From positions 44,082,001 through 44,146,000 of the forward strand of contig NC_079170.1 in assembly GCF_947568905.1 (NCBI RefSeq): DNA of 64,000 nucleotides, read 5' to 3'. Every line of letters begins with the position of its first letter. Positions within the stretch are counted from its first letter, which is position 1. The notes under the pieces are model-generated. The model had not been told where the DNA came from and did no database searches. It was given only the letters and a program-made list of their open reading frames with translations. Source of the DNA: Ostrea edulis. Lineage: Eukaryota. Position numbers and translations under genes: made by a program. This document shows positions 32,349-61,483 of this stretch, in pieces.

Positions 32349-32438
32349 AATTTGGCTCCACTTTTTTGGCACGCTGTTTTTGGCTATAATTAGCTCCAAA
32401 ACTTCATAGTTATTTCGGATTTCAAACATTTCGGTTGA

Positions 32439-32482
32439 ACATCACTGAAGAGACATTATTTGTCGAAATGCGCATCTGGTGC
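32439..32482 (+). ncRNA. Minimal type I hammerhead ribozyme motif (copy A), core intact
   Basis: CATCA-CTGAAGA(32445)-GAC-ATTATTT-GTC-GAAA-TGCGCA-TC^(32476)-TGGTG; helix I CATCA/TGGTG, helix II GAC/GTC, helix III self-complementary ATGCGCAT, AUC triplet. Confidence 0.85.
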
Positions 32483-32790
32483 ATCAAAATTGGTACCGTA
32501 TAAGTTTTACATTATGACCCCTGGGTCGAGGCCTCTGCTGGTGGACTGTTAGTCTCCGAGGGTCTCTACAGCCCAGTAGCTAAGTACTTCGTTACTAGCT
32601 TGAAAATACGGATGTATATTTAATTGCTGGGATAAAATTTAGAAATTCATTTCAAAATTAAGGATTATCTCCCTCATGCATAGCTCTTATCCTTGGACAA
32701 ATTTGGCTCCACTTTTTTTGGCACGCTGTTTTTGGCTATATTTAGCTCCAAAACTTCATAGTTATTTCGGATTTCAAAGATTTCGGTTGA

Positions 32791-32834
32791 GCATCACTGA
32801 AGAGACATTATTTGTCGAAATGCGCATCTGGTGC
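32791..32834 (+). ncRNA. Minimal type I hammerhead ribozyme motif (copy B), core intact
   Basis: GCATCA-CTGAAGA(32797)-GAC-ATTATTT-GTC-GAAA-TGCGCA-TC^(32828)-TGGTGC; 6-bp helix I; cleavage site 352 nt after copy A. Confidence 0.88.
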
Positions 32835-33326
32835 ATCAAAATTGGTACCGTATAAGTTTTACATTAACTACTTATAAAAAATGGGATAGTGGGTCACCCA
32901 ATATATCTTTTTTGTCAGAACAAAATAATCAAAAATAATGGTCATTACCAGATAATGTGGGGAAAATGACCTCTGCTTCCCACTCATTTCACGTGCCTCA
33001 TACATGTTTTCTTAAGCATGTCGACAATATATAAGAAAGACACGTTCACAAGAAGCATTACTTCTTTCATTGGGATATAATGTGCATGTATGTAGTATAT
33101 ATACATATTCAAAGCCAATATTTTTTCCAGATATATTGTCATAAATGGACAAAATGCAACATGTGGCGAATGTATAGTTGAATACATTCATTTACTTTAT
33201 TCATAACTAAGAGGCAACTATCTGTCGGGATACATACTCCATATGCAAATGCGTCATTATCTGTTTATAGATCCGTCTATGTCTTAGTACCAGCATTTTC
33301 GTATATCAGGTATGCTACTTTATACA

Positions 33327-39300: not shown

Positions 39301-40969
39301 GTGTTTCTGAACTGTATGCCTCCACCACAAATTTCATCATGTCGAGCATTTCCTTAGACATCCCGAGTTCATAATATGTAAAGAAAGCAAACAGACACGC
39401 CATCAGGTCTGTTGGAGAATCGGTAAGGATATCTCTGTAAGTCTCCACAACTTGCAAAGTTTGTCTAGGAAAAAAAAGGAAATGTTTACCACATAGATTA
39501 AGCTTTTAATTCAATAAGTAACGAATGGTTATATGTTTATAATCCTAAAAACCCCTTATCTTCCTTCGTCCATACATATTCTAATCTTATACTATCAAAG
39601 GAATAAATTTTGTGATTCTCCGACTAAACGGTAGTACTTAGTTACTTCCCTGAGTTATCGAAATTTGTATCATTAACTTCTTAGATATACAATATCCTCG
39701 TAGTCTTTGGTGTTCAGGTCCTCGAACAGTCTGTTTGAATTTCCATGGGCACGAATTGTGTTCCTTTCTAGCTGACCTGTTTTTATATCGAAGACGTTTT
39801 ATCCATAAAAAAATTCATTCCTACATCAATTCGATATATTCCTGTGAACTCGCGATAAAAGACATCACTCGGGATTATTTCAACTTTTCAATCATCATCT
39901 TCTCATATTTATGTGGCAATATTCCAATATCACCTGCATATGGTGTTTATTTCTCTCAACGAATTCAATATGTAAGAGCTTATTCTGCTTATTATTAGTT
40001 TTTGAATTAAGGTAGACTACTAACAAACAAGTTTATGGTGCAGGGGTTTCAACAGTCTCGTTTAAAATCAGCATTTTGCCGATTATGTGGTCGTTATAAC
40101 GATCTAGTTTGCCAATACAGCCTTTCATTGGTTCAAGTGCTGTCTGTTTTATACCGATTGTTAGGTCGTTCGTGGCACAATGATTTTGACAACGGATAAC
40201 TCCATTTACCTGATAAAGATATAGGACTCTGGACGGGTGATACCGGTCAAAATCAAATGGGCGTTCATCTGCTTAATGTACATGCATTCATTGATACATA
40301 CATGCATCGAAAGAAAATTAGGGAGAAGGAGAAATGTAGGTTTGGCGAAAGGGGTTGAAGACTAAACCCAACCCCATCCACCCCCACCCCTGCCCCGGTT
40401 CTAAATCTTGCATAATGCACACAACAGAATAAAAATCTAATGTAGTGAAGCATTTCAAAACAGTATCGAATGGGTAGTACAGTGCAATCTTCAGTAGTTG
40501 TCGTCCGTATATCCTTTAGAATAACTAATTCAATTCCCCGCGCTTGCAAGGGTCCTCTTCTAGTTCTAATCAAGAGAATATGGACAAAAAAATTACAACC
40601 CACCCTTCTGTCACAAGTTTCAGGGCAGTCACGTGTTTCCGTTCTCTGTCTGTCACTTTCTGTTTCAGGGCTAGATTGGAGATCCCGTCCAGTGCCTTGG
40701 TTACAGCGTCCCTATCACTCTGAGAACCAGAATATTTCAGAGTATTCACCAAAACTTGACCCAAAACTTTAAAAGAAAAAACAACAACATGCTTTACCAC
40801 AAACGTATTACATTGGATTTGTGTAATTTTGGATTCCTTTCACGAATGAAAGTCCCCTAATTTGAAACCACTAGAATAAATTTTTCAGGGCGGTGTTGAT
40901 TACAGCTGTTAAACTACAGCTGCATGTAACTTAAGGGGTAAAAGGTCCATCAAAATACATAATATCATC

Positions 40970-41008
<39 letters not shown>

Positions 41009-43182
41009 TTAAGTCTGAAATATGGTCTGCAATTTTGAAACATTTTGCAACACGCTGTTTTGAAAAATTTCATACCCCACGAAAAGTCGGTTGCTATTTT
41101 CCTATGGTGTATAACAGGAGGAAAGGGGTATACCTCATCAATTAGAGTAATACTTACATATAGGTTGTTGTATTAAGGTTTTCAAACAAATGTAAACCTC
41201 ACATATTATACAAATCTAAATGTACTCCTGTTCTGCTTTCTATAGACATGTAGCCAATGGTCAAATGATTAAATGAACCTTACAACAAAAAGAGAAAAAG
41301 CATCCGTGTAATGTTTTTAGAATGTACATTTCTCATTTTCTATCTATATTATAAGGGGATTGATTGTTTCAAATACACCAATCATGTCAAGAAATTCACC
41401 AATGTATAAAAAGCACATCCATTAAAAGTGAAGATAACGAACAGTGATCAATCTCATATCCCCTACAAGCAATACAAAATAGAGAATAGAGAGTCGTGCA
41501 AACACTGATCCCTGGATACACAAGATGTGGTATCTAGAAGGAGTAGGCATGTTTCTCTTTGTTAAAGAGCATCTGACAACCTACAGACCTGTTTATTAGA
41601 AACCTCCCAAATTAATCCTCCTTACCGAAATCAGGATCTGCTTCCATCATTTGTTTCAATGTATTTCCTATACCACCTAACTCACTGTTTTCGTACAAAC
41701 TTGTCATCTACATAAGAGAGAAAATAAAATAGAGAAAGTACAAATAAATGCGATTATAATATTACAATATATTTACGATCATAATGATCAAAAGGTCACA
41801 GATGTCACGAAATGTATGGATGCTGTTTAATATATTTCCATCGCAATTTGATAAATAACAGCAACGTTTTATATCTTTTTGTTAATTTCATCATAACGGG
41901 AAATACAGTCATTTATTGCCCCTCTTCACATCAACAGACAATTTCGGAGACGCGGAATAATGCAAATTTGAAAGTAATATTAATATACAATATTATTTCT
42001 TTTTTCCCTGGTCCATTCAAAACATGTTGCACATGTAGCTCTCGAGTCGTCACCGGGTTTTTAAGTGCATGCACATGGAAGAGTAAAATGACAAATTCTA
42101 CAACTTAAAGGGACTGGTTCACAATTTTTGATAAAAATAGTTTTCCTTTTTTTTATGGTAAACATCAAAAACTAATTTAATGCTGACAGCCACAATTTTG
42201 ACCTTCTGAATGCAAGAGTAATAGCAATATTTTAGCCTTAAATCTGTGTTATGTAAACAAAGACCCAAAACTTTTTATGTATACAAACAAGTGAAATATA
42301 AAACATTTTAATTTTGATTAATCTCAAATTTGAACTTCTAAATGATACATTTTACCCAAAGAATGCTTAAAATGTGAAAGATATTAATACACTAAGATCG
42401 ATATCCATTTCTTTTAAACATTTCGTAAACAACAACATACCGCAATTTTTGTTTACAAAACAAATAATAAACTCTCTAAAATGAGCTTCTGTGATAATGT
42501 ATAACATTATTCCTTATGTAGACTCTTTTAAACACATTAGACAGTAGATTTTGATCATTAAAAGTGAAAAAGAAAATGTTAGGGAAAATTGTGAATCAGT
42601 CCCTTTAAATGCAATTTGATACCTGTATAATGGCTGCATCAAAGAATTTGCAGGCTTCGTCGCTAGAAGACGTCATCGGTAAATTGGAATCTATCCAACC
42701 CTGTAAGTACAGGAAATGACATCAGAGATAATTCAGGGCATTATGGTAGTTTATTATATCTTACCTTTCCAAATAATACATACCCATAATTCATTAAAGA
42801 GGTTGATAACAATATCAATTACAAATGAGTTGTTTAATACCATATTTAACTCGAAGCAGATAGGGAATTCCATAATTAGTACAATAGTAGATGTACTCTT
42901 AGGCTAAAAAGTCACACGTAATATCCGTTTCATTAAAAGGGGATTTTGATTAAACTTGGATATCAACTCACATGTAAAGCTTAATATTTATATTCAAAAA
43001 CACCCTGCGTTAATTCAATGCTACATTTAAATTTCACAACAGTTGGTATTGCCCTGACAACGCCCCATATTTTCGATTCAGTAAACAAACATTTTGAAAG
43101 CGCAGGCTATGAAATATTTTTGTGATAAATAAGTCATATAAACACACGTTCGTACCTTACAATCTCTCCAACGAGTCGTCAT
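33327..43182 (-). CDS. TTC38: Tetratricopeptide repeat protein 38, 13 coding exons, ~458 aa
   Basis: Exons (5' to 3'): 43182-43156, 42700-42623, 41707-41626, 40766-40604, 39464-39291, 38110-38035, 37755-37636, 37345-37289, 37184-37146, 36379-36307, 35907-35742, 33827-33671, 33491-33327; 1377 nt, all phases compatible. Motifs MTTRWRDCK, SSDEACKFFDA, ADPDF, DSPTDLMA, AIHTMAHI, LACHIAWH, DASSLLYRL, RDVGIPLC, IGGSIAQRDTFVQLLIH run colinear with TTC38 as I know it. Confidence 0.93.
34683..34732. repeat. 16-bp tandem repeat x3 (TTCACAATAGTCAACT)
   Basis: Read directly; lies in TTC38 intron 11. Confidence 0.85.
36500..36745 (-). mobile_element. SINE 3' part related to 44285-44581
   Basis: CGAGAAT(C/T)TTTCAC..ATATGGAGACGTCACC and GCGCTTACGGC.TTGAGCAG blocks shared; head absent. 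Confidence 0.65.
39700..40255 (+). mobile_element. Penelope-like element RT remnant plus 3' UTR (TTC38 intron 4)
   Basis: Frameshifted GTNC..LADLFLY, FRYI, DYFNFSII.FSYLCGNIPISPAYGVY, KLMVQGFQQSRLKSAF pieces (PMGTNCAPLLADLFLY-type RT), running into the same 3' sequence as the short dispersed repeat. Confidence 0.75.
42109..42604. mobile_element. Kolobok-type MITE (496 bp) in TTC38 intron 2
   Basis: TTAA|AGGGACTGGTTCACAATTTT ... AAAATTGTGAATCAGTCCCT|TTAA; the right end is under 20 nt from the exon-2 donor. Confidence 0.85.
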
Positions 43183-47674: not shown

Positions 47675-48908
47675 AACCTATACAGAACATACAATGTAAT
47701 AAACAAACAAAGAAATACGCAACGCGCCAGGTATTTAATGGATATTGATACTGTAATACATTTCAGAATTTAAAAAAATTATATATCTGTTTTTTAAAAT
47801 ATCGTATTGAACATGAACTTTTTGCATGTTTCATTAAAAGTTTTGTATTTCCGTAAACAAACGATAAGGAGAATGGGGCACGGGTACAGACATAATTTTT
47901 AGTATTCAATAATGGTTTTTACATGTAGTAGTATGTGAACGTGGTTGGAATTTTGGATTGGGATTTCAAATCGCACATGCATAGTAAAAACGAAGTTGTT
48001 TTAAGTAACTACTTAAGCTGTTTATTGAAATCATTGAATTACATTTACATTTGTTTTCAATAACTTTAACGAAGAACAAACCGGCTAGAGTTCTTGTTAA
48101 GATTGGACACCTACATCATTCAGGTTGTCAAACTGTAATTTATTCTTATTTCAACAATGGTACATGGCTATAAAATCTGTAGCAGCCTAGTGTTATTCTA
48201 GTTTTTAGTGTTATTATTATTTGTACCAACATACCTTGGAACAGATTTTTGTTCTCAGTCATGTTAAATACAACAATGATTTGGAATGTAGATCTATTAT
48301 TAGCATCATACAATTGTACATTCCGATCGATGGACAACATTCCAACTGTATATCCTCACTCCTCACACTCAGAAACTATTTTCTGGTCATGTAGAAAAGA
48401 ACATTAACGACGGGTATAACTGTGGCTTTGTTAAAAAAAAAAAAATATATATATATACATAGATCCGCCACAGGTTTCTCTCTTTTACTCGCTTTATTCC
48501 TATCGGGTTCGACATTCGACTGTGTTTACATTCTCAAAACCGAAACAAGTAGGTGAAATATAAACATTAATAGCCTTTAATTCATATTGATTATTCGACC
48601 AGTGCTTTATCGATAATTGTTCTACATTTTCTTTTGAAAAGTAATTGGAAAAAATGGGGTAAAATGGACACCTCTGTTAACTGCGCATGTACATGATCTC
48701 CTTTATTTATGATTTTCACTCGTTAATTGTTCTCCGTGTTTACATATGAAAAAGTTAGTAACCATACATTTCTTTAACATGTTGTATCAGGATTTCTGTT
48801 GTTAGGTGTTCTTGTTTCAAACAATAGATATATTATTAGGCATGCCGCATATCTATTACATTATATGATTGTCATTGCAGAACATTCATCAACTGACTTT
48901 CACACATT

Positions 48909-51692
48909 ATGGCAACATCCAAATTTGTATCTATATCATACATGCACCAGTTGTCTACAAAGGATTACTTAGCAGATAGTGATATTGAGCAATCTTCTCC
49001 AGAATTCCATTCAGTACTGCATCACGCTGTATTAAAAGGCGATGTTGATGCGTGTATTACGGAGGCAAAGAACTGTGAAAATATTAATGCTGGGGACTTA
49101 AGAGGTGATTCAGCCCTTCATTTAGCTGTGCGTTGGGTAGATCAAATAGGTGAAAAGTTGATCAGCACTTTGGTTTCCTCAGGTGCTGACATAAACAGAA
49201 AGAACAAATGGGGTCAAACCCCTCTTCATCACGCTGTTTACTCTGGGTCCTCTCGCAATGTTCGATGTCTTCTAAGTCGGACAGGTATTGATGTAAATTT
49301 AGCAGATGTGAATGGGTATACTCCCCTTCACTGTTGTTTTAGATTTAAGTTAGACATGGAAAATATTGAAGACAGCGAGCGGTATTCTCTGGAAGAAGGT
49401 GACGAATGTCTTGATATTGTCAAAATGTTGATACATGGAGGTGCAAATATTAACAAAGTAACAAAATATGGAAGCAGTATTCTCCATTTCATTGCAAGAC
49501 GGGATGATAATACACCACTTTTAAGATTCATCTTGGAAATGCACTTGGGGTTCAATTTGTTTTTGAAAAACACAATAGGTGAAAATTTTCTACATGTGTA
49601 TGTTGTGAGTGAAGTATTCGAAAACGTCATCGAAATCGTTGAATTTATTGCAGCGAATTACTGCAGGGACACTGTGAAGAGATTGCTTAACGACGAAGAT
49701 ATATTTGGAAGAGCGCCTTGGTCGTACATGATAGATACAGCAAATATTGATAGGGATACTGTGCTAAGATTTTCAGAATTTGGAATTGATTTGATGTCAG
49801 CAGACAGGATGAGAAACACACCATTACACAGATTAGCAGGGGTGTCATGTGTTTCTGTTTTAACTGATGTGTTGGAAATACTAACGTATGGGAATACTAA
49901 AGTTAATTCGAGGAATGTTTACGGGGAGTCAGCTGCCTTTGTCTTCTTCCTCGAAGACGTTTATCAAACGTTTGTAGATACCAATATAAACTTCAGTGCC
50001 AGAGACAGGTGGGGGAGGACTCCCCTGATGTCTTTAATCAAACACAGACCCAAACCGGAACTGCTCAGTAGACTTATCATTGAAGGGAAGGCCGATGTTA
50101 ATGCTGCAGATGAACATGGATCCACACCACTTCATTTGGCTTGTTATCACAATTTCGAAGAACAAGTGAAGCTACTTTTACATCACGGAGCCAATGTTTC
50201 AGCTGTAGACAGTTTGAATGACACACCTATTGATACTGTAAAACGACACACTAGTTATCGATGTCACAAACTCTTGTTACACAAGGTGAATCAGGAACTT
50301 CTTTATTCACGCAACAAACCTTTCGAGGACATTCTTCTCGACATGCCAAAATACATATGTAGTTCAGTTATCAAATCGAAAGAAAGTATAGCAAATGCAA
50401 TGGGTCTTCCAGAAGACCGCTCTGAACTATTTGAATTTTTAATGAACACTTATCATAAAAGAACACCAGAAAGTGCTATGGAAGTTTCTCAAGTTTCTCA
50501 AGAAGTTGTACAACTTGTAAACTCTTTATGTAAATCCGTGGCATCATATGATAGACGATTTAACATGTCTGTTTTTCGAACTGGATCTTCCGAGGAAGGA
50601 ACGAAGGTCGGTCCTCCGGATGAATTTGATTTTGCCCTATGTATTAATGATTTGAGGGATATCACGCATGTAGTTATGACAGAAGAATGCGTCGAAAGGG
50701 GGTTTGCATGCCTCAAATTTTCACAAAACCCTATTCCCGAGGATTATTTACCATTTGCAGATTCTGAAGAATATTTTCTTGCGTTTCCTTTTCTCAAATT
50801 GTATTATACATATTTGAAGAGAGCTTTGAACGAAACAGCCACATGGACTGCTGGAAATATTTATTTCAATTACGAAGATAAAATGGATGTCATAAATGGA
50901 AAGCCAGTTTTCAATTTTGCAGTTTATTGGATAGGAGCAGTATACAAGCAACTCAAAATTAGCATTGATTTGGTTCCTGTCGTGTACACACCTGGATGGT
51001 GGCCCAAAAATGTTAAATTTCCCACAGTCCCAGAAATGCACGAAGAGGTTCAGAATGCGGGTTGCTTTCTTGTTCTACAGACAAAGGTGAATGATTTCAA
51101 TACAAATAATCTCATTGTATGGGATGACATTTACGAGACATGCAACAATAGAAACAACGAGAACAAGAGAAGAATGCTTCGCGTGTCAGCCGCTCCTGCT
51201 GAGATAGCACTAATGAAAAATATACCAAACACATTCAAATCCGCCTATATTCTGGCTAAAATTGTGAAAAGTCAAGAAGTGTGTCCAAAAATTGAAATCA
51301 ACGAAATTTCTTCGACAGCTCTTATGCATCGTAGAGCATTTGATATGAGAAAACCCCTCCCAATCAACCCATCTCATGTGATTAAAAGCTACATGCTTAA
51401 AAACTGCACGTTTTACCTCTGGCTAGAAATGTATCCAGCTTCCGAAGAAAAAGAACTGACTAGCATAGACCTTACTGGTCGTCTCTACCAATACCTTTTG
51501 GAATTCACGAACGACCGCTATCTAAATCCCTTCTTTCTTCCTTACTCTGACGTTTTCGAATTTGAAAAAGATGAAACGACGTCATCATACCAGAAACTTT
51601 TGCTCCACATGAAAAGGGAATTCAGTATAAAGACAATTCTAGGTATCCTAAAGCAAGATTTCGAAGAGAAATACTTATTTTCACCAATGTAA
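48909..51692 (+). CDS. Ankyrin-repeat cGAS-like receptor (ANK-cGLR / Mab-21 nucleotidyltransferase), paralogue 1, 927 aa
   Basis: N-terminal half has ~12 ankyrin repeats (GDSALHLAV, GQTPLHHAV, GYTPLH, GSTPLHLAC). C-terminal NTase: FRTGSSEEGTKVGPPDEFDF (GS at 50583, DEFD at 50619), third acidic residue in ISIDLVP (50967), Mab-21 C-lobe KSYMLK and NPFFLP. Coding region intronless; acceptor TTGCAG at 48880 just before the ATG. Confidence 0.92.
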   Translation: MATSKFVSISYMHQLSTKDYLADSDIEQSSPEFHSVLHHAVLKGDVDACITEAKNCENINAGDLRGDSALHLAVRWVDQIGEKLISTLVSSGADINRKNKWGQTPLHHAVYSGSSRNVRCLLSRTGIDVNLADVNGYTPLHCCFRFKLDMENIEDSERYSLEEGDECLDIVKMLIHGGANINKVTKYGSSILHFIARRDDNTPLLRFILEMHLGFNLFLKNTIGENFLHVYVVSEVFENVIEIVEFIAANYCRDTVKRLLNDEDIFGRAPWSYMIDTANIDRDTVLRFSEFGIDLMSADRMRNTPLHRLAGVSCVSVLTDVLEILTYGNTKVNSRNVYGESAAFVFFLEDVYQTFVDTNINFSARDRWGRTPLMSLIKHRPKPELLSRLIIEGKADVNAADEHGSTPLHLACYHNFEEQVKLLLHHGANVSAVDSLNDTPIDTVKRHTSYRCHKLLLHKVNQELLYSRNKPFEDILLDMPKYICSSVIKSKESIANAMGLPEDRSELFEFLMNTYHKRTPESAMEVSQVSQEVVQLVNSLCKSVASYDRRFNMSVFRTGSSEEGTKVGPPDEFDFALCINDLRDITHVVMTEECVERGFACLKFSQNPIPEDYLPFADSEEYFLAFPFLKLYYTYLKRALNETATWTAGNIYFNYEDKMDVINGKPVFNFAVYWIGAVYKQLKISIDLVPVVYTPGWWPKNVKFPTVPEMHEEVQNAGCFLVLQTKVNDFNTNNLIVWDDIYETCNNRNNENKRRMLRVSAAPAEIALMKNIPNTFKSAYILAKIVKSQEVCPKIEINEISSTALMHRRAFDMRKPLPINPSHVIKSYMLKNCTFYLWLEMYPASEEKELTSIDLTGRLYQYLLEFTNDRYLNPFFLPYSDVFEFEKDETTSSYQKLLLHMKREFSIKTILGILKQDFEEKYLFSPM

Positions 51693-52091
51693 TTTGACAA
51701 ATAATTAAATGCCAGAGAAATAATTGACCCATATGTATTCTATGGCCAATCAATACATATATATATAATGTAATATAATTATTATATGTTTATTTTTAGT
51801 TATTTTAAATGTAAATGCTCTATCAAGGTGTTTCTTTTACCTGTGTTGCTTTGAATGTTTGATTAGTTCAGTCTGAAACTGTAGGTGAATTATTTGTAAC
51901 AGATATACCCTGCGAATCTTTGATACATGTTAATCATCGTCAATATCAAAAGGTGAAGATATAATTCTTAAAATTATACAGATGTTTTTAAATATTTTAT
52001 ATAAAGAAAAGGCACAGTAATGTATCTCTCATATTAAACATACCACATATCTTTAGTTAGTCATATAGGTAAGGAAAAAACCCAGAACAGT

Positions 52092-53135
52092 ACCTGTAGT
52101 ATATTAATCAACGCGTTTTGTGTATGTTTGTTTACCTGTAGTATATATGTAATGTATAAATGCCTTAATCAACACGTTTTGTGTATGGTTGTTCACCTGT
52201 AGTATATATGTAATGTATAAATGCCTCAATCAACGCGTTTTGTGTATGGTTGTTTACCTGTAGTATATATGTAATGTATAAATGCCTTAATCAACGCGTT
52301 TTGTGTATGGTTGTTTACCTGTAGTATATATGTAATGTATAAATGCCTCAATCAACGCGTTTTGTGTATGGTTGTTTACCTGTAGTATATATGTAATGTA
52401 TAAATGCCTCAATCAACGCGTTTTGTGTATGGTTGTTTACCTGTAGTATATATGTAATGTATAAATGCCTCAATCAACGCGTTTTGTGTATGGTTGTTTA
52501 CCTGTAGTATATATGTAATGTATAAATGCCTCAATCAACGCGTTTTGTGTATGGTTGTTTACCTGTAGTATATATGTAATGTATAAATGCCTTAATCAAC
52601 GCGTTTTGTGTATGGTTGTTTACCTGTAGTATATATGTAATGTATAAATGCCTCAATCAACGCGTTTTGTGTATGGTTGTTTACCTGTAGTATATATGTA
52701 ATGTATAAATGCCTTAATCAACGCGTTTTGTGTATGGTTGTTTACCTGTAGTATATATGTAATGTATAAATGCCTCAATCAACACGTTTTGTGTATGGTT
52801 GTTTACCTGTAGTATATATGTAATGTATAAATGCCTTAATCAACGCGTTTTGTGTATGGTTGTTTACCTGTAGTATATATGTAATGTATAAATGCCTTAA
52901 TCAACATGTTTTGTGTATGGTTGTTTACCTGTAGTATATATGTAATATATAAATGCCTTAATCAACATGTTTTGTGTATGTTTGTTTACCTGTAGTATAT
53001 ATGTAATGTGTAAATATCTTAATCAACATGATTTGTGTATGGTTGTTTACCTGTAGTATATATGTAATGTATAAATGCCTCAATCAACACGTTTTGTGTT
53101 TGTTTACCTGCAGTATATATGTAATGTATGAATAT
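52092..53135. repeat. 61-bp tandem minisatellite, ~17 units
   Basis: Unit TACCTGTAGTATATATGTAATGTATAAATGCCT(C/T)AATCAACGCGTTTTGTGTATGGTTGTT; pattern shifts 1 nt per 60-nt line, giving period 61. Confidence 0.95.
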
Positions 53136-53877
53136 TTTGTTTGTACGCCTATATTGTTTTACGTCTGATTTGAACAGGTTTCATAATTTAGAAAAGTCAT
53201 GAGCTTTGAATGAAGCACAAAATATGTTGATCTCTGACTGGTGCTTAAGGCCCTGGCAGCGGTGGGTTTTTTTATCATACCAAAACCTTCATTTGCTTGA
53301 CATGTCTATTCTAAAGGTCATATTCGAAAGTCCTAAATGGATTTCCGAACATTTTGTTTATAAATCAAATGAAATGTCATAACATGGCATGGGGTTTTGG
53401 GTGAATTGGCTTATAATTATATTCCAAATGAATTTGAAATATATGTCATGTTCTGGGGTTTATCCCTAAGACAAGTAATTACTTTACCAATTGAAATATA
53501 ATGTAGCTATGCGTGTTACTTCCCAACTGTGTCGTAAATGAAATTGCCTATCATCAAGTAAAACATTTACGTACTTTTGCATGGATAGAAAACTTAAGTA
53601 GAATTGGCTATGTGACAATCAGGAAACGTTCATTAAATCATTTTTTTGTAAATAAATATGCCTCGAAAAATTATTGTGATTTTGTACAATTTCCTTTTAT
53701 GTTAAAATCACAAAGTATGCAGGACATACATGATGATTTTACAAGGAGAATCCTCATGGACCAACACGTTTTCGCTGTGTATATATATACACATTTCCCT
53801 ATTTATTGCATATTAAGAACTTTTTTATCTATCATTCAATTGCATATTTTGTAAAGTCCCAATTCGAGGTAAGATTA

Positions 53878-53920
<43 letters not shown>

Positions 53921-54374
53921 ATATCTTGATATATTTTCCCTTTATACACCCCAGCTAGCATAGAGACTAGGATCTTAAGTGATAAGTAAGATTTACCTGC
54001 ATTGATTTTAAATCGTTTGAACATGCATGTATATATATTTGTAGGAAGGAAGAGGTAAATGCCGTATTATACAGTCTGTGCTATGTGTATGCTATATATC
54101 ACAATAATGACCAATGATGGTATTCTGCATATGGCAATACATTTCTTAACAGTTCTGAATTGCTCGCGAATTTCTCTGAATTTCATTTTAAGATATCGTT
54201 ATCTAAATGCAACGTTGGTTTGTGTTTAAAGAACATCAATGTTTCACACATAATTAAATTACACCTATTTCAAACTACATCATGAATTTTGTTTGAAAGA
54301 AAACCGCATTTCAGCTCTTTTGGGGAAGGGGCTATTTTCTTAACGTCTCGTTCATTTTTCACACAAGTAAAGAC

Positions 54375-54625
54375 GTCGTCAGATTTAGGTGATGCACCAC
54401 AATTTGTGACGTATACATGGCGCTCAGGGCCGTAACAATAAGCGTTCGTGAAACATCGTGCTGACTTGTCATCTCTACTCTTAAGGTCAAATCCGAAAGC
54501 ATAATGACTTTCACTTCTAAGTCCGAGCGCTTAGCGAAGGAATAGCTACTACCTATGTTAAAATCATAATTTGATGCGACTCCGGGTGACTATTGTGGAG
54601 AACGCCCTAACCACTGGGGAACCGC
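54375..54625 (-). mobile_element. Degenerate SINE copy
   Basis: AAGACGTCGTCAG...GGCGCTCAGGGCC...CCGAGCGCTTAGCGAAGGAATAGCTACTACCTATG colinear with the 28.7-kb and 44.3-kb copies; A-box-like CAGTGGTTAGGGCG on the minus strand. Confidence 0.55.
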
Positions 54626-57600
54626 ATCGGGAATTTTTATCTCTGTGTCACTTGACTTATCTTGAACATAAAATTTGCCTATGTTTGATGTTCATAGGAG
54701 CTACGTCACCAGAAGCATGTCATATTCACCTGCTGTTCCGATAGTTCCGCATTGTTTCGGAGCAGATGTTACAATATTGCTCAGCAGGCAATCCCTATTT
54801 GGTTTATTACGTGAATGGTTACAGCCACAGAGTTTGCTTTTCCGTAAAGAATTGAAGAATGCTGTATGATACCAAAATGTCGAAGATAAACTGTGTTACT
54901 TGAATAATAAAATGTTTTCCTTGGTTTCGAATGTGGGAAACGAGGGTTGTAAACATTGCAGTTTTTTTGTTTGTTTGTTTTTTTGGCAATGTTTGCGACC
55001 TTCATTTCGCTATTTTTCCTGACTTAGGGTTTAAGTCCTACTCGTGGTGGGGAGATATACCTAATTTTCTGAAACTACAATACATATGTAAATACATGTA
55101 TATACATGTATATTCTCCTGAACATCTCGCGGACAAACTGTAAACATTGGTTTATGTCACACAAAACTGCCTTTAGTTGATATATCGACTCACGTGACTG
55201 ACTTTTCGTACATTCGTTGTATTAGAAATATGAATTACACATGTCAATATTCATTTAGACTGTATTCTTATTGATGATTCTACCTTCTCTGGAACGTAAC
55301 CTGAGAATAGATTTAAGTTTAAATTTCGAATGTTATTAACTTCTGAAATGATTTTCATAAACAAATAAAATTATCCGTATTTGTTGGTAATTGATTTGTT
55401 TATAAACCAGTAGTTTTTTTTCTAATATCTGTGCGAGATAAATCTCACGATATCAGTAGTCAAATCTTGACTTAAGTCTTTTCTCAGTTTATGGTCTTGA
55501 GGCCTGGACTGAGAGTGCATTACACAACCCAAGCAGGATATAGCTGTGCAACTTTTGATAGGGAAAATGCGTTTAATTCACAGAGTTATGTTAAGTGGGT
55601 ATGCACTGCTCTTGACATTCCTTATCATAGGTCAATACATGCGCATGCACATGTTGTAACTCTCAACAGCTTATCTTGCTGTTTTGTCACAACTGTTTCA
55701 GTTTCATATGCGTGAATCACTGCATTATTATCTTGACCGACTGAGAACCTGGGAATGAAACTATAAAGGTAGGCAATATATCTCCTCCAATCCTCTTTTG
55801 TAATGATGAATTAAAAGATTGCATTATGAAATAATAGTAATTTGTCCTTGTACATTTAAGTAGATAATTGATTTACCCTAGTTTGATATTCCTACAGGGT
55901 TACGTAAGAGTTTTAAAACAGTTTTTTTACGAGTAAGCATGGGCTTCTATGTCAAGTTGAAAGAACATCTGCACGTCTTCATTGAGAAATGAAAACAATA
56001 AATTTGTAAAGGTTTATTAAAGACAAAATATATGCAAATACATGTAGATATATTCCGTATCAATCATGTAAATACATGCACTTCCTGTATTTGTATATTT
56101 ATATCCAAGGGAAATAATGTCCATATAATTTATATTTAACGGATTCGTTATGACGCCGATACAAATGCAAATTATTAACAAAAGATTAACCATTCTCTCT
56201 ATGGATTGGAACTTTTTCGTAAGCATGGTCAGAATTTTCATCAAACTTTACTGGGCGATAGGAACACTATGTCACGGCATGTAGGTTCTACGTACCTTCG
56301 TTGTTATGACAGCGGTAGAAAATAATGGTGTCTGTAAGTTTTATTACCATTATCATTTTTTTTTTTGCTTGAACACAATATCCAGTTTCACTGCAACATA
56401 GACTGTCGTTGACAATCAGAACCTGAAATCTAATACTTTGTTTCAGAAAAAAACAATTAAAACCCGTTTTGGAAAGATGATTGTAACAGCTTATATGCAT
56501 AAAGTCGGACATAGATTCACAAAAACTTCTAAACAGACAAATGGCTGTGGTATTTACAAAGATCCATACCATAATATATTTTAAAACTCAATCTATAGAG
56601 GTTGTTGCGTGTTCAGGATGTCCATTTTGATTCCAAATCACGATCAACACACCAGAGTCGATGAATATCTAACATCTTTTCCCTCGCCAACTTATTGGCA
56701 ATATAAGTGAGAATTCCGATGAAATAGTAAGATACACGATTCTATATCCTGGTAGATGTTGCCATGTTATAGGCCATATTTGTTAAACGACCAATGTCGT
56801 CTATCAAAGGTCAATATCTATGACACTTCATGGAAAGCTGCAAGTGTTTATCTATGGCTGTTATTGTTACGTAACTTTTATCACAAATTGTCGTTATTAC
56901 TCGGTATTGTGAATTTATAGTCTACTCCATTTATATTTATGTTCCTTTTATTATATTTTGTTGTATTAAGTAAAATTAATCTTCATTATCACTGTTTATA
57001 TAGTTCAACATCTGTTGTATATGAACATCTTAATTTGATATATCCGGAGTAGACTGAACATGTATTGACCTTAATCTAGTAAAGGTAAATTGTTGACTGA
57101 TATATCAATTCACTGATTCATGTTGATGTGGTAATAAATGATTATACAGGTCGACAGGGGATGCTTACTCCTCCTGATCCCGCCTCTTGTATATACAGGG
57201 CTCTCTATATGCCCTACGCTTAATTTTACATTCCTTATAAGAGTTAAGATAATGACCAATGATCGTTATCTTAACCTTTACATTTAACCACTGTAACTAG
57301 TTTTTGATAAATATAACTTATCAAAAATATGAATTAAGTCATTAGGTATTGTATAACAATAACAACTTTAGATATATAACGTGATTACAGTTAACAATGA
57401 CACCACCATCTTCGGTCTGTTAACAATGCCTCAAACTATTAAAAATCAGAGATACCATGCACAGTCGTATAACAAGTACCACTGAGACGGAGAATTCCTC
57501 CCAAAGGAATTCCAAAGTTGAAATCAGTCATTGCATTTTGAGTGATACTTTTATAATACAGTATGATTGTGGTATGATAATCGACTGTTTTGGAAGTTTT

Positions 57601-57714
57601 ATATCCACTGTTCGTTATCTTCACGTTTCATCCATAGATACAGCACTACTGAAATCATCGTTGTACATGATTTACACATTCGGATGCAAAAGTAGAATAT
57701 TCATATTCCTTTAC

Positions 57715-58400
57715 TAGATATGTAAATAGATACACAAACACACATAGGTACAGACACATATATGCATAAACAGAATTCCTACAGACAGGCAGACATACTT
57801 CAATCCATACATACAGGCAGACATACATATTTTCAGCCATACATACATATAAACATATACATGTAGGTACACATATGCGCATACACACATGTATACACAC
57901 GTACAAACAGACATGTATACATAAATACACACACATCGTGACACATGTATACATTCATATACACACATACATTACTGAAGAGACATTATTTGTCGAAATG
58001 CACATCTTGTGCATCAAAATTGGTAGCGTATAAGTTTTACCGTATGACCCCTGGGCCGAGGATGAAAATACGGATGTATATTTAGTTGCTGGGATAAAAT
58101 TTAGAAATTCATTTCAAAATTAAGGATTATCTCCCTCATGCATAGCTCTCATCCTTGTACGAATTTGGCTCCATTTTTTGGCACTCTAGTTTCATTTTAG
58201 CTCTCACAAGTTTATTGTTATTTCGAATTTCCAAAATGTTGGCTTGAGCATTACTGAAGAGACATTATTTGTCGAAATGCACATCTGGTGCATCAAAATT
58301 GGTACCGTATAAGTTTTACATACATACATACATACATTCATGCATACATACCTACACACCTACATACATACATACATACATATGCATAAAGATATATACA
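57715..58400. repeat. (CATA)n/(CA)n compound microsatellite interrupted by the retrozyme insertion
   Basis: ACATACAT-rich on both sides of 57972-58320. Confidence 0.8.
57972..58320 (+). mobile_element. Retrozyme-like repeat with internal deletion, two hammerhead motifs (C 57975, D 58254)
   Basis: CTGAAGA-GAC-ATTATTT-GTC-GAAA-TGCACA-TC twice, 279 nt apart; the CCTCTGCTGG...ACTAGC segment of the 352-nt unit is missing; flanked by (CATA)n/(CA)n. Confidence 0.8.
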
Positions 58401-58717
58401 CAACTGTGTGAAGGATGTACTCAATGAAACTACAGTTAGTGGTGTTATACGTTACTGTAGAAAGGCATACACTCGTTAAAAAAAGTACAAAGCCCAATCT
58501 CTCAACAAGTCCACACGTTGCAAAGCAAACAGAGTGAGGCACAATTTTGTGTTTGGAATCAATCTATATTACAAGACTAAGTTCGAAGAGAATCTGTGAC
58601 CAAGCGTGTCAAACTATATACCTGTAGTATCACAGAACATGACTGTTCATCAGATGTTCATAATATCTTCACCTTGTTTATTTTCAGGGCAGATTTTCGC
58701 CCACAATAATTGAAAGG

Positions 58718-61483
58718 ATGGCAAAGCACAGCATATCATTTACAGTAGCCTTACATCAAAAATGTAACAAAGTCACCATTGAGGAGGATGAAATTGAAAA
58801 ACCTTCTCCTACATTCTGTACAAGTCTTCATGCTGCAATATTGGATGGTAGCATTGATGCATGTCGACGAGAGGTACATAATGACAAGTCTATCATCAAT
58901 ACCTGTAATTCTAGAGGTGACTCGCCTCTTCATCTAGCCGTCCGATGGATTACACAGATGGGTGTGAAGTTGGCGGAAACTTTGATGTCGGCTGGAGCAA
59001 ACATTAACGTTCGGAACAAGTGGGGTCAAACACCGCTTCACTATGCCGTGTTCGTGGAATCCATTCACAATGTTAGTTGTCTTCTTGCACATCCGGGTAT
59101 TGATGTTAATGTAACAGATGTCAATGGTTATACGCCATTGCATTGCTGTTTTCGGTTTCAAAAAGACTCAGAGAAACATTTTCATCAAAGCACGGTTTTT
59201 CTAGATATTGCCGAAAAGCTGATAGATGCAGGTGCTGACACAAATGCACAAACCGAAATAGGAGACACTATTCTGCACCTTATTGCGAGGAGGTCTGATA
59301 ATACGCCGCTTTTACAGTTTTTCTTGAAAAAATACTCATCATTTATTTTGTTCAATAAAAACAAAAAAGGCGAGAATTTTTTGCATGTATATGCAACTGC
59401 TGAAATTTTCGAAAATGTCATGGAAACTATTGAATTCGTAGCAAAGAATAATTCTCACAATGTCGTTAAAACATTGCTTCGTGAGAGAAATATCAATGGA
59501 AGATCACCTTGGGAGCATATGGTCGATAGTGGGAATGTTGATGATAAATCGGTAACTCGTCTCATTGAATTTGGGGTTGATGTCTCTGTTTCAGATAATC
59601 TGAAAAATACTGCTTTACACAGGCTAGCAGGAGTTTCCTCTGCAATAGCATTTAACGATGTCCTAAATGTTCTAGTCAAAGAAAATGTTAACATCAATTT
59701 CAGAAATATATTTGGCGAGTCAGCTGTCTTTTTGCTTTTCTTGGAGAGTGTTTTTGAAGTATTGGTGAAATCAAATGCGGACTTCAATGCAAAAGATCGC
59801 TGGAACAGGTCACCTCTTATCTCCATCATGAAGCATAGACCCTTACCTGAATTGCTGAGGAGGCTTATCGTTGAAGGAAATGCAGATGTAAATGCGGTGG
59901 ATGAAACTGGATCCACTCCACTTCATTTTGCTGCTTGTCACAATTATGAAGAGCAAGTAGAACTTCTGCTGTGTCATGGTGCTAATATCTTTGCTGTAGA
60001 TCATTTAAACGACAGACCTATTCACACAGCTCAAAGGCATTGCAGCTTCCAATGCCACAGATTACTTGCCCTTAACGAAAGTCAAGAAATTCTTTATTCG
60101 CGTTCCAACTGCTTTGATTTGGAAAATATTCATCGACGCATTCCAGAGTGCATTCCGATTTCGGAAATAAGAACTAAAGAAAGCATACAGCGTTTAACGG
60201 GTCTTCCAGAAAATCGTTCTGAATATTTGAATTTTTTAATGGATGCTTATGGTAAGAGACAACCTGAGCATGAAAAAGAAGTTTTTCAGATTACGGAAGA
60301 AGTATCAAGACTTGTGCACAATCTGTGCAGATTTGTGGCGTCATACGATAAGCGATTCCAGATGACGGTGTTCCGAACGGGGTCTTCAGAAGAGGGAACT
60401 AAGGTTGGACCCCCGGATGAGTTCGATTTTGCCCTCTGTATCGGGGAACTGAGGAAAATAACACGTGTAGTGATGACCAAAGAATGTGTTAAGGAGGGAT
60501 ATGCATGCCTGAAGTTCAAGCAAAATCCTGTACCGAACGAGTATTTACAATTTTCAGATTGCGAAGGATATTTCCTTTCTATTCCATTTCTTAAACAGTA
60601 TCATACATATCTGAATAAAGCTTTAAACGAAGTATCATTGTGGACTGAAGGAAACATGTATTGCAAGTTTGAAGACAAAATGCATGTAATTCATGGAAAA
60701 CCAGTGTTCAACTTTGAAGTGTACTGGATTGGTTCTGTATATAAGCAACTCAAAATCAGCATTGACTTGGTTCCTGTTGTATATACCCTTGGCTGGTGGC
60801 CAAAAAATATTTATCCACCCGAAGTTCCAGAAATGGATGAAATGGTTCGACAGGCGGGTTGCTTTCTTATTCTTCAATCGAGAGTAAATGATTTTGATAC
60901 AAACAGTATCATAACTGATGATGACATCTTTGAGACATGTAACAACGATCGTAATAAGAAAACTAAAAGGATGTTGAGAGTATCAGCAGCCCCTGCAGAA
61001 ATAGCATTGATGAAAGTTTTACCCGATCCATTTCGGTCCGCTTACATCATTGCTAAACTAATGAAAAATAAAGACGTTTGTCCACAAATTGATATTGACA
61101 AGCTTCCAACAAAGATGTTATCCCTCTCAGAAAAATTTTCGAGGGAATTACCAATAAACCCTTCACGTGCAATAAAAAGCTATATGCTGAAAAACTGCAC
61201 CTTTTACCTTTGGCTTGAAATGCAGGCATCCTTAAAAGAGGGGGAAGTAAACAGCATGGAAATTGCTGCTCGCATATATGAGAGCCTTTTGAAGTTTACA
61301 AACGACCGCTTTTTGAGTCCGTTTTTTCTTCCGTACTCTGATGTATTTGAATTTGAAAAAGATGACCAAATGTCACCCTATAAGGAATTCTTGCTGCGAT
61401 TAAAAAGAGAGTTCAGCATTAAGACAATCCTGGGAATGTTAAACCACGATTTTCCCGAACATTGTTTGTCTTCTCCTGCATGA
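58718..61483 (+). CDS. Ankyrin-repeat cGAS-like receptor (ANK-cGLR / Mab-21 nucleotidyltransferase), paralogue 2, 921 aa
   Basis: Colinear with paralogue 1. Identical blocks: FRTGSSEEGTKVGPPDEFDFALCI, KQLKISIDLVPVVYT, RMLRVSAAPAEIALMK, IKSYMLKNCTFYLWLEM, PFFLPYSDVFEFEKD. Acceptor TTTTCAG at 58687 before the ATG. Confidence 0.92.
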   Translation: MAKHSISFTVALHQKCNKVTIEEDEIEKPSPTFCTSLHAAILDGSIDACRREVHNDKSIINTCNSRGDSPLHLAVRWITQMGVKLAETLMSAGANINVRNKWGQTPLHYAVFVESIHNVSCLLAHPGIDVNVTDVNGYTPLHCCFRFQKDSEKHFHQSTVFLDIAEKLIDAGADTNAQTEIGDTILHLIARRSDNTPLLQFFLKKYSSFILFNKNKKGENFLHVYATAEIFENVMETIEFVAKNNSHNVVKTLLRERNINGRSPWEHMVDSGNVDDKSVTRLIEFGVDVSVSDNLKNTALHRLAGVSSAIAFNDVLNVLVKENVNINFRNIFGESAVFLLFLESVFEVLVKSNADFNAKDRWNRSPLISIMKHRPLPELLRRLIVEGNADVNAVDETGSTPLHFAACHNYEEQVELLLCHGANIFAVDHLNDRPIHTAQRHCSFQCHRLLALNESQEILYSRSNCFDLENIHRRIPECIPISEIRTKESIQRLTGLPENRSEYLNFLMDAYGKRQPEHEKEVFQITEEVSRLVHNLCRFVASYDKRFQMTVFRTGSSEEGTKVGPPDEFDFALCIGELRKITRVVMTKECVKEGYACLKFKQNPVPNEYLQFSDCEGYFLSIPFLKQYHTYLNKALNEVSLWTEGNMYCKFEDKMHVIHGKPVFNFEVYWIGSVYKQLKISIDLVPVVYTLGWWPKNIYPPEVPEMDEMVRQAGCFLILQSRVNDFDTNSIITDDDIFETCNNDRNKKTKRMLRVSAAPAEIALMKVLPDPFRSAYIIAKLMKNKDVCPQIDIDKLPTKMLSLSEKFSRELPINPSRAIKSYMLKNCTFYLWLEMQASLKEGEVNSMEIAARIYESLLKFTNDRFLSPFFLPYSDVFEFEKDDQMSPYKEFLLRLKREFSIKTILGMLNHDFPEHCLSSPA

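What the first reader, a model, noticed from the sequence alone, without database searches (positions are those of the whole stretch)
48909..61483. Tandem pair of catalytically intact ankyrin-cGAS-like receptors
Seen: two ~920-aa paralogues with ~12 ankyrin repeats fused to a Mab-21/cGAS-type NTase. Both keep GS, the DEFD acidic pair and the third Asp. Established: cGLRs make cyclic dinucleotides for STING signalling and are expanded in bivalves; from memory, accessory-domain fusions including ankyrins have been noted but are little characterised. Inference: the ankyrin array may replace nucleic-acid binding as the sensor or autoinhibitor. The NTase blocks are nearly identical while surface regions differ, which fits diverging ligand specificity.
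Basis: partly seen in the sequence, partly recalled or inferred. Interest (0 to 1): 0.75.

Follow-up and report, generated by a model that had tools for sequence, protein, structure and literature searches.

The report
Oyster ankyrin-fused cGAS-like receptor gene pair
Two neighbouring oyster genes each encode an intact cGAS-like immune enzyme fused to twelve ankyrin repeats; this fusion type is already catalogued in bivalves and corals, but nobody has yet shown what it senses or makes.

Summary
Window 48909-51692 and 58718-61483 (+ strand) are two uninterrupted ORFs of 927 and 921 aa, 59% identical. Each has a 12-repeat ankyrin solenoid, a helical linker and a C-terminal cGAS/Mab-21 nucleotidyltransferase. 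The predicted NTase fold matches oyster Cv-cGLR1 (Z 28.2) and cGAS (Z about 27). The GS loop, the E-x-D pair and the third Asp are present in both proteins and invariant in 55 homologues.

The pair is old: dS is saturated and dN/dS is about 0.12. Gene 1 is the positional counterpart of a single Saccostrea gene.

The architecture is not new. Li et al. 2023 (PMC9980059) list ankyrin-cGLR fusions as a domain class, and their Table S2 contains members of this same family from C. gigas, Mytilus and Actinia. No function has been shown for it.

The NTase domains are acidic (pI 5.3 and 6.5) and lack the cGAS zinc thumb, so a non-nucleic-acid ligand is plausible. Canonical ankyrin binding positions are no more diverged than framework positions, and both domains evolve under similar purifying selection (omega 0.16-0.22).

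No expression data could be obtained. Verdict: real, new members of a known kind. The scan had noted another ankyrin-cGLR elsewhere in this genome.

The parts
48909..51692 (+). Gene 1 CDS (927 aa plus stop), a single coding exon encoding an ANK-cGLR
   Evidence: ORF list and translation; Pfam Ank plus Mab-21. An in-frame TGA at 48894-48896 lies upstream of the ATG (read). The exact protein is encoded in assembly GCA_947568905.1, record OX387710.1.
48999..50303 (+). Gene 1 ankyrin solenoid, 12 repeats (about aa 31-465)
   Evidence: Repeat starts at aa 34, 66, 102, 136, 188, 224, 267, 302, 339, 369, 404 and 437. AF2 helix pairs with pLDDT mostly above 90. Foldseek matches to 12-repeat ankyrin solenoids.
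50304..50498 (+). Gene 1 structured helical linker (about aa 466-530) between the ankyrin array and the NTase spine helix
   Evidence: AF2 secondary structure and pLDDT of 80-95. It is the least conserved segment between the paralogues (49% identity, omega 0.28).
50499..51689 (+). Gene 1 cGAS/Mab-21-fold nucleotidyltransferase domain (about aa 531-927)
   Evidence: VIA-align Z 28.2 to Cv-cGLR1 (8gjw) and Z about 27 to cGAS. Foldseek E 1.8e-12. Family profile against mouse cGAS, E 3e-17.
50583..50588 (+). Gene 1 GS motif (G559, S560)
50619..50633 (+). Gene 1 PDEFDF motif; the catalytic pair is E572 and D574
50958..50975 (+). Gene 1 ISIDLV motif; the third catalytic Asp is D687
51180..51203 (+). 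Gene 1 RVSAAPAE motif, matched by eye to cGAS RLSFSxxE; S760 and E765 are invariant and R758 is nearly invariant in the family
   Evidence: for the invariants. The comparison by eye used the human cGAS sequence printed in Table S3 of PMC9980059.
51384..51404 (+). Gene 1 KSYMLKN motif (S827, Y828, K831), equivalent to cGAS SYHVK
   Evidence: Profile alignment (domain 3); invariants
58718..61483 (+). Gene 2 CDS (921 aa plus stop), a single coding exon encoding an ANK-cGLR paralogue
   Evidence: The exact protein is found in the same assembly and on 7 Logan contigs colinear with the window.
60380..60385 (+). Gene 2 GS motif (G555, S556)
60416..60430 (+). Gene 2 PDEFDF motif (E568, D570)
60755..60772 (+). 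Gene 2 ISIDLV motif (D683)
48878..48880 (+). Putative splice acceptor (polypyrimidine tract then CAG) 28 nt upstream of the gene 1 ATG. Inference only; it would imply a non-coding 5' exon.
   Evidence: Sequence read. No transcript data.
58685..58687 (+). Putative splice acceptor (TTTATTTTCAG) 30 nt upstream of the gene 2 ATG. Inference only.
   Evidence: Sequence read. No transcript data.

Best explanation
These are two anciently duplicated, intact genes of the ankyrin-fused branch of the animal cGAS-like receptor (cGLR) family, in an oyster genome. Each has a single coding exon.

Shown here: each protein is a 12-repeat ankyrin solenoid joined by a structured helical linker to a cGAS-fold nucleotidyltransferase. 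All metal-binding and nucleotide-binding motifs are intact, and both copies are under purifying selection.

Inferred: they are ligand-gated nucleotidyltransferases that make a cyclic di- or oligonucleotide signal, which is read by the oyster's STING-family receptors. The activating input is probably not dsDNA or dsRNA on a basic NTase surface. It is more likely a conserved protein or other partner engaged by the ankyrin array, which the model couples rigidly to the catalytic domain. The array would then act as sensor, scaffold or autoinhibitor.

My probability that they belong to the cGLR family is about 0.95. My probability for the whole mechanism is about 0.5.
For: - Architecture and intactness.
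- Fold: Z 28.2, rmsd 3.3 A over 337 of 346 residues to C. virginica cGLR1, and Z about 27 to cGAS; Foldseek.
- Profile homology: E 3e-17 to cGAS, against 4.5e-9 to MAB21L1.
- Invariant in 55 homologues from bivalves, a coral and crinoids: G559, S560, E572, F573, D574, K680, D687, S760, E765, Y780, K784, S827, Y828, K831.
- Selection: omega 0.08-0.22 in every domain.
- Charge: acidic NTase, pI 5.3 and 6.5, family median 6.3. Li et al. report pI above 8.5 for nucleic-acid-sensing cGLRs, and acidic cGLRs with unknown ligands.
- No zinc thumb: only 18 residues lie between E765 and K784, where cGAS carries its H/C-rich insert (read).
- Geometry: full-length AF2 pLDDT 88 and pTM 0.88, the same pTM as the NTase alone, implies a defined interdomain geometry.
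- Catalogue: family members are already in the curated cGLR list of Li et al..
Against: - No biochemical or expression evidence exists for these proteins.
- A complete active site does not prove activity. Li et al. count MAB21L1/2 and MB21D2 as having complete putative active sites; that no product is known for them is from memory.
- Sample 86 in the 140-protein screen of Li et al. is an NTase-only construct of a coral protein. That protein has about 466 residues ahead of its Mab-21 domain and was matched to this family by eye on motifs only. The construct carries no 'active' label.
- Thirteen of 51 family NTase domains have pI above 7.5, so charge is not uniform.
- I had no model coordinates, so where the ankyrin array docks on the NTase is unknown.
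Confidence: 0.5

Rival explanations
1. Non-enzymatic Mab-21 scaffold. The proteins keep the motifs but signal through protein-protein contacts, with the ankyrin array recruiting a kinase or adaptor, as proposed for shrimp Mab21 proteins acting on IKK-epsilon. Alternatively they have a non-immune role like MAB21L1.
For: - PMC12928593 (title and abstract seen) describes crustacean Mab21 proteins working outside the nucleic-acid/CDN paradigm.
- Li et al. count MAB21L1/2 as having complete putative active sites; that no product is known for them is from memory.
- An NTase-only construct of an apparent coral relative (matched by eye on motifs) was not flagged active in the Li et al. screen.
- Moderate, uniform purifying selection and low copy number fit a housekeeping-like partner interaction.
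Against: - Fourteen positions in the NTase domain stay invariant over very deep divergence (bivalves, a coral, crinoids; 22-27% overall identity to the coral and crinoid rows). They include the GS loop, the acidic triad and the S-Y-x-x-K motif. This is hard to explain without catalysis or at least nucleotide binding.
- The profile is closer to cGAS (E 3e-17) than to MAB21L1 (4.5e-9).
Confidence: 0.2
2. A conventional nucleic-acid-sensing cGLR. The NTase surface still binds dsRNA or dsDNA, and the ankyrin array only localises the enzyme or recruits downstream factors.
For: - All ligands so far identified for animal cGLRs are dsDNA or dsRNA.
- The closest structural neighbour is an oyster cGLR.
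- Some family members have basic NTase domains: 6 of 51 have pI above 8.5.
Against: - The NTase pI here is 5.3 and 6.5 and the family median is 6.3, below the 8.5 signature reported for nucleic-acid sensors.
- There is no zinc thumb.
- The coral NTase-only construct carries no active label after testing with dsDNA and poly I:C.
Confidence: 0.15
3. The two paralogues are diversifying receptors whose ankyrin surfaces have diverged to recognise different, fast-evolving pathogen ligands.
For: - The paralogues differ more in the ankyrin part (53-56% identity) than in the NTase (66%).
- Tandem duplication is typical of expanding immune families.
Against: - Canonical binding-face positions are no more diverged than framework positions: 42/72 against 198/357 identical, p 0.70. 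The same holds against four other oyster homologues, and entropy is equal across 33 relatives.
- Ankyrin-part omega is 0.20-0.22 in unsaturated pairs, close to the NTase value.
- The duplication is ancient (dS above 2), not a recent burst.
- Site-level positive selection was not tested.
Confidence: 0.1

Closest known systems
Ankyrin-repeat-fused cGLRs catalogued by Li et al. 2023 (PMC9980059, Fig. 1C/S2A, Table S2), including C. gigas XP_034320286.1 and XP_034320581.1, Mytilus CAC5405686.1 and CAG2193426.1, and Actinia XP_031549647.1
   Same: This is the same protein family. These accessions fall in 90%-identity clusters (P0007, P0009, P0010) that are 56-63% identical to gene 1 over the NTase region searched (about 51-58% over the full-length alignment). 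They share the full ANK-linker-Mab-21 layout and length.
   Different: The window's two genes are a different species' copies, one of them a deeper paralogue. The paper only lists the architecture. It gives no ligand, product or structure for it.
Cv-cGLR1 of Crassostrea virginica (PDB 8gjw)
   Same: Best structural match to the NTase domain: Z 28.2, rmsd 3.3 A over 337 residues. Same catalytic motifs, and also from an oyster.
   Different: Only 17% identical. The crystallised part starts at residue 288, and I did not determine the nature of its N-terminal region, so I cannot say whether it has an ankyrin array.
Vertebrate cGAS
   Same: Same fold (Z about 27). The GS, E-x-D, D, R-x-S...E and S-Y-x-x-K motifs align.
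   Different: No zinc thumb, an acidic rather than basic catalytic domain, and a 465-residue ankyrin array in place of the disordered basic N-terminus. About 17-18% identity.
MAB21L1 (PDB 5eog, 5eom)
   Same: Same fold (Foldseek E about 3e-10) and the same Pfam family.
   Different: Weaker profile match, 4.5e-9 against 3e-17 for cGAS. MAB21L1 is a developmental protein with no known product (from memory).
OAS and RNase L (analogy only, from memory)
   Same: A cGAS-like NTase pathway in which an ankyrin array takes part in nucleotide-signal handling. The ankyrin repeats of RNase L bind 2-5A.
   Different: In that system the ankyrin array is on the effector, not on the synthase. The ankyrin part here matches only generic ankyrin and DARPin sequences, with no RNase L among the 60 best.

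Membership tests
cGAS-like receptors (cGLR; Mab-21/cGAS-type CD-NTases of animals) | Bilobed cGAS/Mab-21 nucleotidyltransferase fold | tested here: met
   AF2 domain model with pLDDT 86. VIA-align Z 28.2 to 8gjw and Z about 27 to cGAS over 320-337 residues. Foldseek probability 1.00.
cGAS-like receptors (cGLR; Mab-21/cGAS-type CD-NTases of animals) | Pfam PF03281 (Mab-21) match above the gathering score | tested here: met
   31.7 and 26.0 bits against a cut-off of 24.1. The family profile matches cGAS at E 3e-17.
cGAS-like receptors (cGLR; Mab-21/cGAS-type CD-NTases of animals) | Complete active site: the GS loop, the [DE]-h-[DE] pair and the third acidic residue | tested here: met
   G559/S560, E572/D574 and D687 in gene 1; G555/S556, E568/D570 and D683 in gene 2. 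They align to the cGAS motifs and are invariant in 55 homologues.
cGAS-like receptors (cGLR; Mab-21/cGAS-type CD-NTases of animals) | Inclusion of the family in the curated cGLR set of Li et al. 2023 | tested here: met
   Cluster mates of the closest homologues (XP_034320286.1, XP_034320581.1, CAC5405686.1, CAG2193426.1, XP_031549647.1) appear in Table S2 of that paper.
cGAS-like receptors (cGLR; Mab-21/cGAS-type CD-NTases of animals) | Synthesises a nucleotide second messenger | not testable with these tools
   Needs enzymology. The only related datum is that an NTase-only construct of an apparent coral relative (sample 86) carries no 'active' label in Table S3.
cGAS-like receptors (cGLR; Mab-21/cGAS-type CD-NTases of animals) | Activation by a specific ligand (receptor behaviour) | not testable with these tools
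   No ligand is known for any ANK-cGLR in the papers found.
Nucleic-acid-sensing cGLRs / cGAS proper | Basic ligand-binding surface (pI above 8.5, per Li et al.) | tested here: not met
   NTase pI 5.3 and 6.5; family median 6.3.
Nucleic-acid-sensing cGLRs / cGAS proper | Zinc-thumb insert (H-x5-CC-x6-C) of vertebrate cGAS | tested here: not met
   Only 18 residues lie between E765 and K784, with no Cys/His cluster (compared by eye with the cGAS sequence shown).
Ankyrin-repeat proteins | Tandem 33-residue helix-turn-helix repeats forming a solenoid | tested here: met
   Pfam Ank families at E 1e-37 or lower. Twelve repeats. TMt 0.83-0.84 to 12-repeat ankyrin fragments.

The most novel reading that the evidence does not exclude
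The ankyrin-cGLR family is a conserved branch of cGLRs that does not sense nucleic acids. In this reading the 12-repeat ankyrin solenoid, held rigidly against the NTase, binds a conserved protein or small-molecule partner and gates synthesis of a nucleotide signal. That would make it the first protein-gated animal cGLR. The two oyster paralogues would then be long-kept, non-redundant channels into the oyster's multi-STING network.
Probability: 0.35. Interest if true: 0.7.

Novelty: new member of a known kind. Interest (0 to 1): 0.35.

Why it matters
Most animal cGLRs have no known ligand. Per Li et al. 2023, 87% of cGLRs are stand-alone enzymes, and ankyrin-fused ones are among the remaining domain-fusion classes. 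No function for the ankyrin-fused class turned up in the papers searched.

This pair adds no new architecture. The analysis does give a concrete, testable picture of the class:
- a fixed layout of 12 ankyrin repeats, a linker and the NTase, kept from crinoids to bivalves;
- invariant catalytic residues;
- an acidic catalytic domain;
- an ankyrin face that is conserved rather than diversifying.

That points experiments toward a conserved partner rather than toward nucleic acids or fast-evolving pathogen proteins. For oyster biology it marks two candidate innate-immune sensors that could be followed in infection transcriptomes.

Tried and rejected
The runs found were DNA or of unknown kind. Logan contigs carrying gene 1 and gene 2 are colinear with the genome and end at repeat boundaries. 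They say nothing about transcription or the putative 5' acceptors.
2. A specific ankyrin relative such as RNase L. The PDB sequence search gives only generic DARPin, ankyrin and TRP matches.
3. Hypervariable ankyrin binding face. Tested and rejected.
4. Domain-wise positive selection. Rejected at the domain level. Site models were not run.
5. A second copy next to the Saccostrea orthologues. None lies within 10 kb of either Saccostrea gene.
6. More ANK-cGLR copies or fragments in the window. None found.
7. Contamination as the explanation for the Actinia homologue. Made unlikely by its sea-anemone-type neighbour gene, though a chimeric contig is not excluded.
8. Rfam hammerhead matches for the repeat upstream of gene 2. 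None, even at E up to 1.
9. The ankyrin-NTase interface.
10. The large representative-protein search and the ESM Atlas searches were not run, because the family was already clear.
Full report
**What is there**

The window carries two uninterrupted ORFs on the + strand, 48909-51692 (927 aa) and 58718-61483 (921 aa). Pfam finds several ankyrin families in both (E 1e-37 to 1e-39). It also finds PF03281, the Mab-21 nucleotidyltransferase domain, at 31.7 and 26.0 bits against a 24.1-bit cut-off.

The proteins are 59% identical over their whole length. DNA similarity is limited to the coding region (49101-51661 against 58913-61452, 67.6%), and the flanks do not align. No other copy or fragment lies in the window.

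For gene 1, an in-frame TGA (48894-48896) sits between a plausible splice acceptor and the ATG, so the whole CDS is one exon (read). For gene 2 the frame is open back to the putative acceptor. However, the N-terminus aligns with gene 1 and the family consensus from Met1.

The exact proteins are encoded 9.8 kb apart on record OX387710.1 of assembly GCA_947568905.1. Public runs holding the DNA include 'oyster metagenome' samples, and the nearest named relatives are Saccostrea. The host is therefore an oyster. From memory, unverified, that assembly is Ostrea edulis.

**Anatomy**

A full-length AlphaFold2 model built on 55 homologues is confident, with mean pLDDT 88 and pTM 0.88.
- Residues about 31-465 form 12 helix-pair repeats. 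Twelve G-x-TPLH-like repeat starts were located in the sequence.
- This part superposes on known 12-repeat solenoids: AnkB R13-24 at TMt 0.83, ankyrin-R D34 at 0.84 and a 12-repeat DARPin at 0.73.
- Residues 466-530 are a structured, mostly helical linker.
- Residues 531-927 are the nucleotidyltransferase.

Modelled alone (pLDDT 86), the C-terminal 462 residues match C. virginica cGLR1 (8gjw) best, at Z 28.2 and rmsd 3.3 A over 337 of 346 residues. Dozens of cGAS structures follow at Z about 27 (Foldseek). A family profile hits mouse cGAS at E 3e-17, Cv-cGLR1 at 1.5e-15 and MAB21L1 at 4.5e-9.

**Active site**

The profile alignment lays GSsaEgTKvgrPDEFDF on cGAS GSYYEHVKISAPNEFDV, kisiDLVPA on EISVDIILA, and ikSYmLKn on FCSYHVKT. 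Positions in the two genes:

| Motif | Gene 1 | Gene 2 |
|---|---|---|
| GS loop | G559, S560 | G555, S556 |
| Acidic pair | E572, D574 | E568, D570 |
| Third Asp | D687 | D683 |

Across 55 full-length homologues, down to 22% identity, the invariant columns in the NTase domain are G559, S560, E563, K566, E572, F573, D574, K680, D687, P699, S760, E765, Y780, K784, S827, Y828 and K831. Three ankyrin-array positions (D401, H409, D434) are also invariant.

RVSAAPAE matches the cGAS motif RLSFSxxE by eye, using the human sequence printed in Table S3 of PMC9980059. Only 18 residues separate E765 from K784, where cGAS has its Cys/His zinc thumb, so the thumb is absent. cGAS residue numbers are from memory and are not needed for the argument.

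**Age and selection**

Between the paralogues, synonymous sites are saturated (pS 0.72, dS above 2) and dN/dS is about 0.12.

In a maximum-likelihood tree of the NTase region, gene 1 groups with the two Saccostrea proteins (SH-aLRT 94). Gene 2 lies outside that group but inside a fully supported oyster clade, which also holds the Crassostrea/Magallana proteins (P0005, P0007).

Exon-like matches to the TTC21-like gene that lies upstream of the Saccostrea genes occur at window positions about 39.9-42.7 kb. Gene 1 is therefore the positional orthologue. Neither Saccostrea locus has a second copy within 10 kb.

In pairs with unsaturated dS, omega is similar in both domains:

| Pair | dS | omega, ankyrin part | omega, NTase |
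|---|---|---|---|
| P0005 / P0007 | 0.35 | 0.20 | 0.16 |
| Saccostrea echinata / S. cucullata | 0.64 | 0.22 | 0.18 |

Identity along the proteins peaks at the catalytic blocks (residues 541-600 and 661-720, 78-90%) and at ankyrin repeats 10-11 next to the linker (68-75%). It is lowest in repeats 4-5 and 7-9 and in a loop at residues 781-820.

**Test of 'diverging ligand specificity'**

I took the six positions per repeat that form the canonical target-binding face. These are the positions randomised in DARPins, known to me from memory, and I placed them relative to each repeat's Gly. The two paralogues are identical at 42 of 72 such positions (58%) and at 198 of 357 framework positions (55%), Fisher p 0.70. 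Comparisons with four other oyster homologues give the same picture. Entropy across 33 relatives is 1.42 for the binding face and 1.47 for the framework. The binding face is conserved like the rest, which argues for a conserved partner rather than an arms-race ligand.

**Clues to the ligand**

The NTase domains have pI 5.3 and 6.5, and the family median over 51 domains is 6.3, with 6 above 8.5. Li et al. report that dsDNA- and dsRNA-sensing cGLRs have pI above 8.5, and that acidic cGLRs probably respond to other ligands.

The full-length pTM (0.88) equals that of the NTase alone. I take this, as an inference, to mean that AlphaFold predicts a fixed ankyrin-NTase arrangement.

**Comparison with what is known**

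Li et al. 2023 (PMC9980059) state that 87% of cGLRs are stand-alone enzymes but that some carry TPR or ankyrin modules (Fig. 1C, S2A). They also note ankyrin- and death-domain-fused cGLRs in Stylophora.

Their Table S2 contains the following members of this family:
- C. gigas XP_034320286.1 and XP_034320581.1, from the P0007 cluster;
- Mytilus CAC5405686.1 and CAG2193426.1, from the P0009 cluster;
- Actinia XP_031549647.1, which is P0010.

It also contains Acropora XP_029202789.2, which belongs to the P0067 cluster. The family is therefore already catalogued as cGLRs.

In their 140-protein screen, sample 86 (Acropora digitifera XP_015747416.1, Mab-21 domain at residues 467-821) is an NTase-only construct. 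Its motifs match this family's consensus by eye: ISIDLVPAVY, VLAKAIRNSYVCPQI, SYLLKN. It carries no 'active' label. This is a weak negative datum, consistent with a need for the ankyrin part or for an untested ligand.

Three further literature searches found no paper that characterises an ankyrin-cGLR.

The single-coding-exon structure is shared by the Saccostrea, Mytilus, Mercenaria and Actinia genes. C. angulata has two consecutive loci, LOC128169255 and LOC128169256, in one 90% cluster on the same 355-kb contig. That suggests an independent recent tandem duplication there (adjacency is inferred from the numbering).

**Mechanism and confidence**

Shown:
- family membership by fold, motifs and catalogue;
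- intact genes under purifying selection;
- an ancient duplication.

Inferred:
- synthesis of a nucleotide second messenger;
- gating through the ankyrin array by a conserved, non-nucleic-acid partner.

The rivals are a non-enzymatic scaffold, a conventional nucleic-acid sensor with an ankyrin adaptor, and diversifying receptors. They are scored in their own sections.

**Limits and compliance**

- I sent no part of those places to any database, pattern, paper or findings search afterwards.
- The Rfam scans were cut at 51700 and 51800.
- From then on, scripts used a copy of the window with those 39 bases masked.
- One earlier local script compared locus L002 with the whole window file inside the sandbox. 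Nothing matched there.
- No N runs occur in the window.
- Nothing suggested human sequence.
- No expression evidence was obtained.

**Verdict**

This is a correct and carefully read observation of two real genes. They are new members of an already catalogued but functionally unexplored class. Interest is moderate to low for novelty. It would be higher if the ankyrin-gated, non-nucleic-acid reading were confirmed.

Noticed in passing
L013:10001-12790 (Actinia tenebrosa contig WAHB01001390.1); neighbour gene at L013:15474-16565 (-): The sea anemone's ANK-cGLR (XP_031549647.1) is of the bivalve type. It is 63% identical to a Mytilus protein but only 25% identical to the coral ANK-cGLR, and it nests inside the bivalve clade. 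AU tests reject trees that place it outside (p 0.002 and 0.0006; the groups were named after seeing the tree). Its neighbour 2.7 kb away, with no assembly gap between them, is a GPCR whose nearest relatives are Actinia and other anemone proteins. This is a candidate horizontal transfer of an intronless immune gene from a bivalve to an anemone, or else a chimeric contig.
   Followed up: partly
window 57970-58321: A dispersed repeat just upstream of gene 2 has copies at 32349-32864, 14630-14856 (-) and 8623-8799 (-), at 84-97% identity. Other notes of the scan call it a hammerhead/retrozyme. Rfam finds no hammerhead family here, either at gathering threshold or at E up to 1, and none at gathering threshold anywhere in the window. 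All seven Logan contigs carrying gene 2 start at 58299-58317, at the edge of this repeat.
   Followed up: partly
window 52104-53133: A minisatellite lies between the two genes: 17 copies of a 61-bp unit, 96% matching.
   Followed up: no
window 30142-31626 (+): A 494-codon ORF whose C-terminal part matches Pfam Otopetrin, a proton-channel family (E 1.3e-12, 47.9 bits). It is probably a large exon of an otopetrin-like gene.
   Followed up: no
window about 39900-42712: Exon-like translated matches to the TTC21-like (TPR) gene that lies upstream of the ANK-cGLR in both Saccostrea genomes. This is conserved synteny on the 5' side of gene 1.
   Followed up: partly
window 58317-58382 and 53879-53918: (TACA)n and (CT)n microsatellites. 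The former gives spurious weak miRNA-family hits in Rfam at E-value thresholds.
   Followed up: no
They were left out of all later searches and nothing is claimed about them.
   Followed up: no
PMC9980059, Table S3, samples 85-86: At least one NTase-only construct, and probably two, from coral proteins that appear to belong to this ANK-cGLR family were in the published 140-enzyme screen. The family match was made by eye on motifs only. Neither construct carries an 'active' label.
   Followed up: partly
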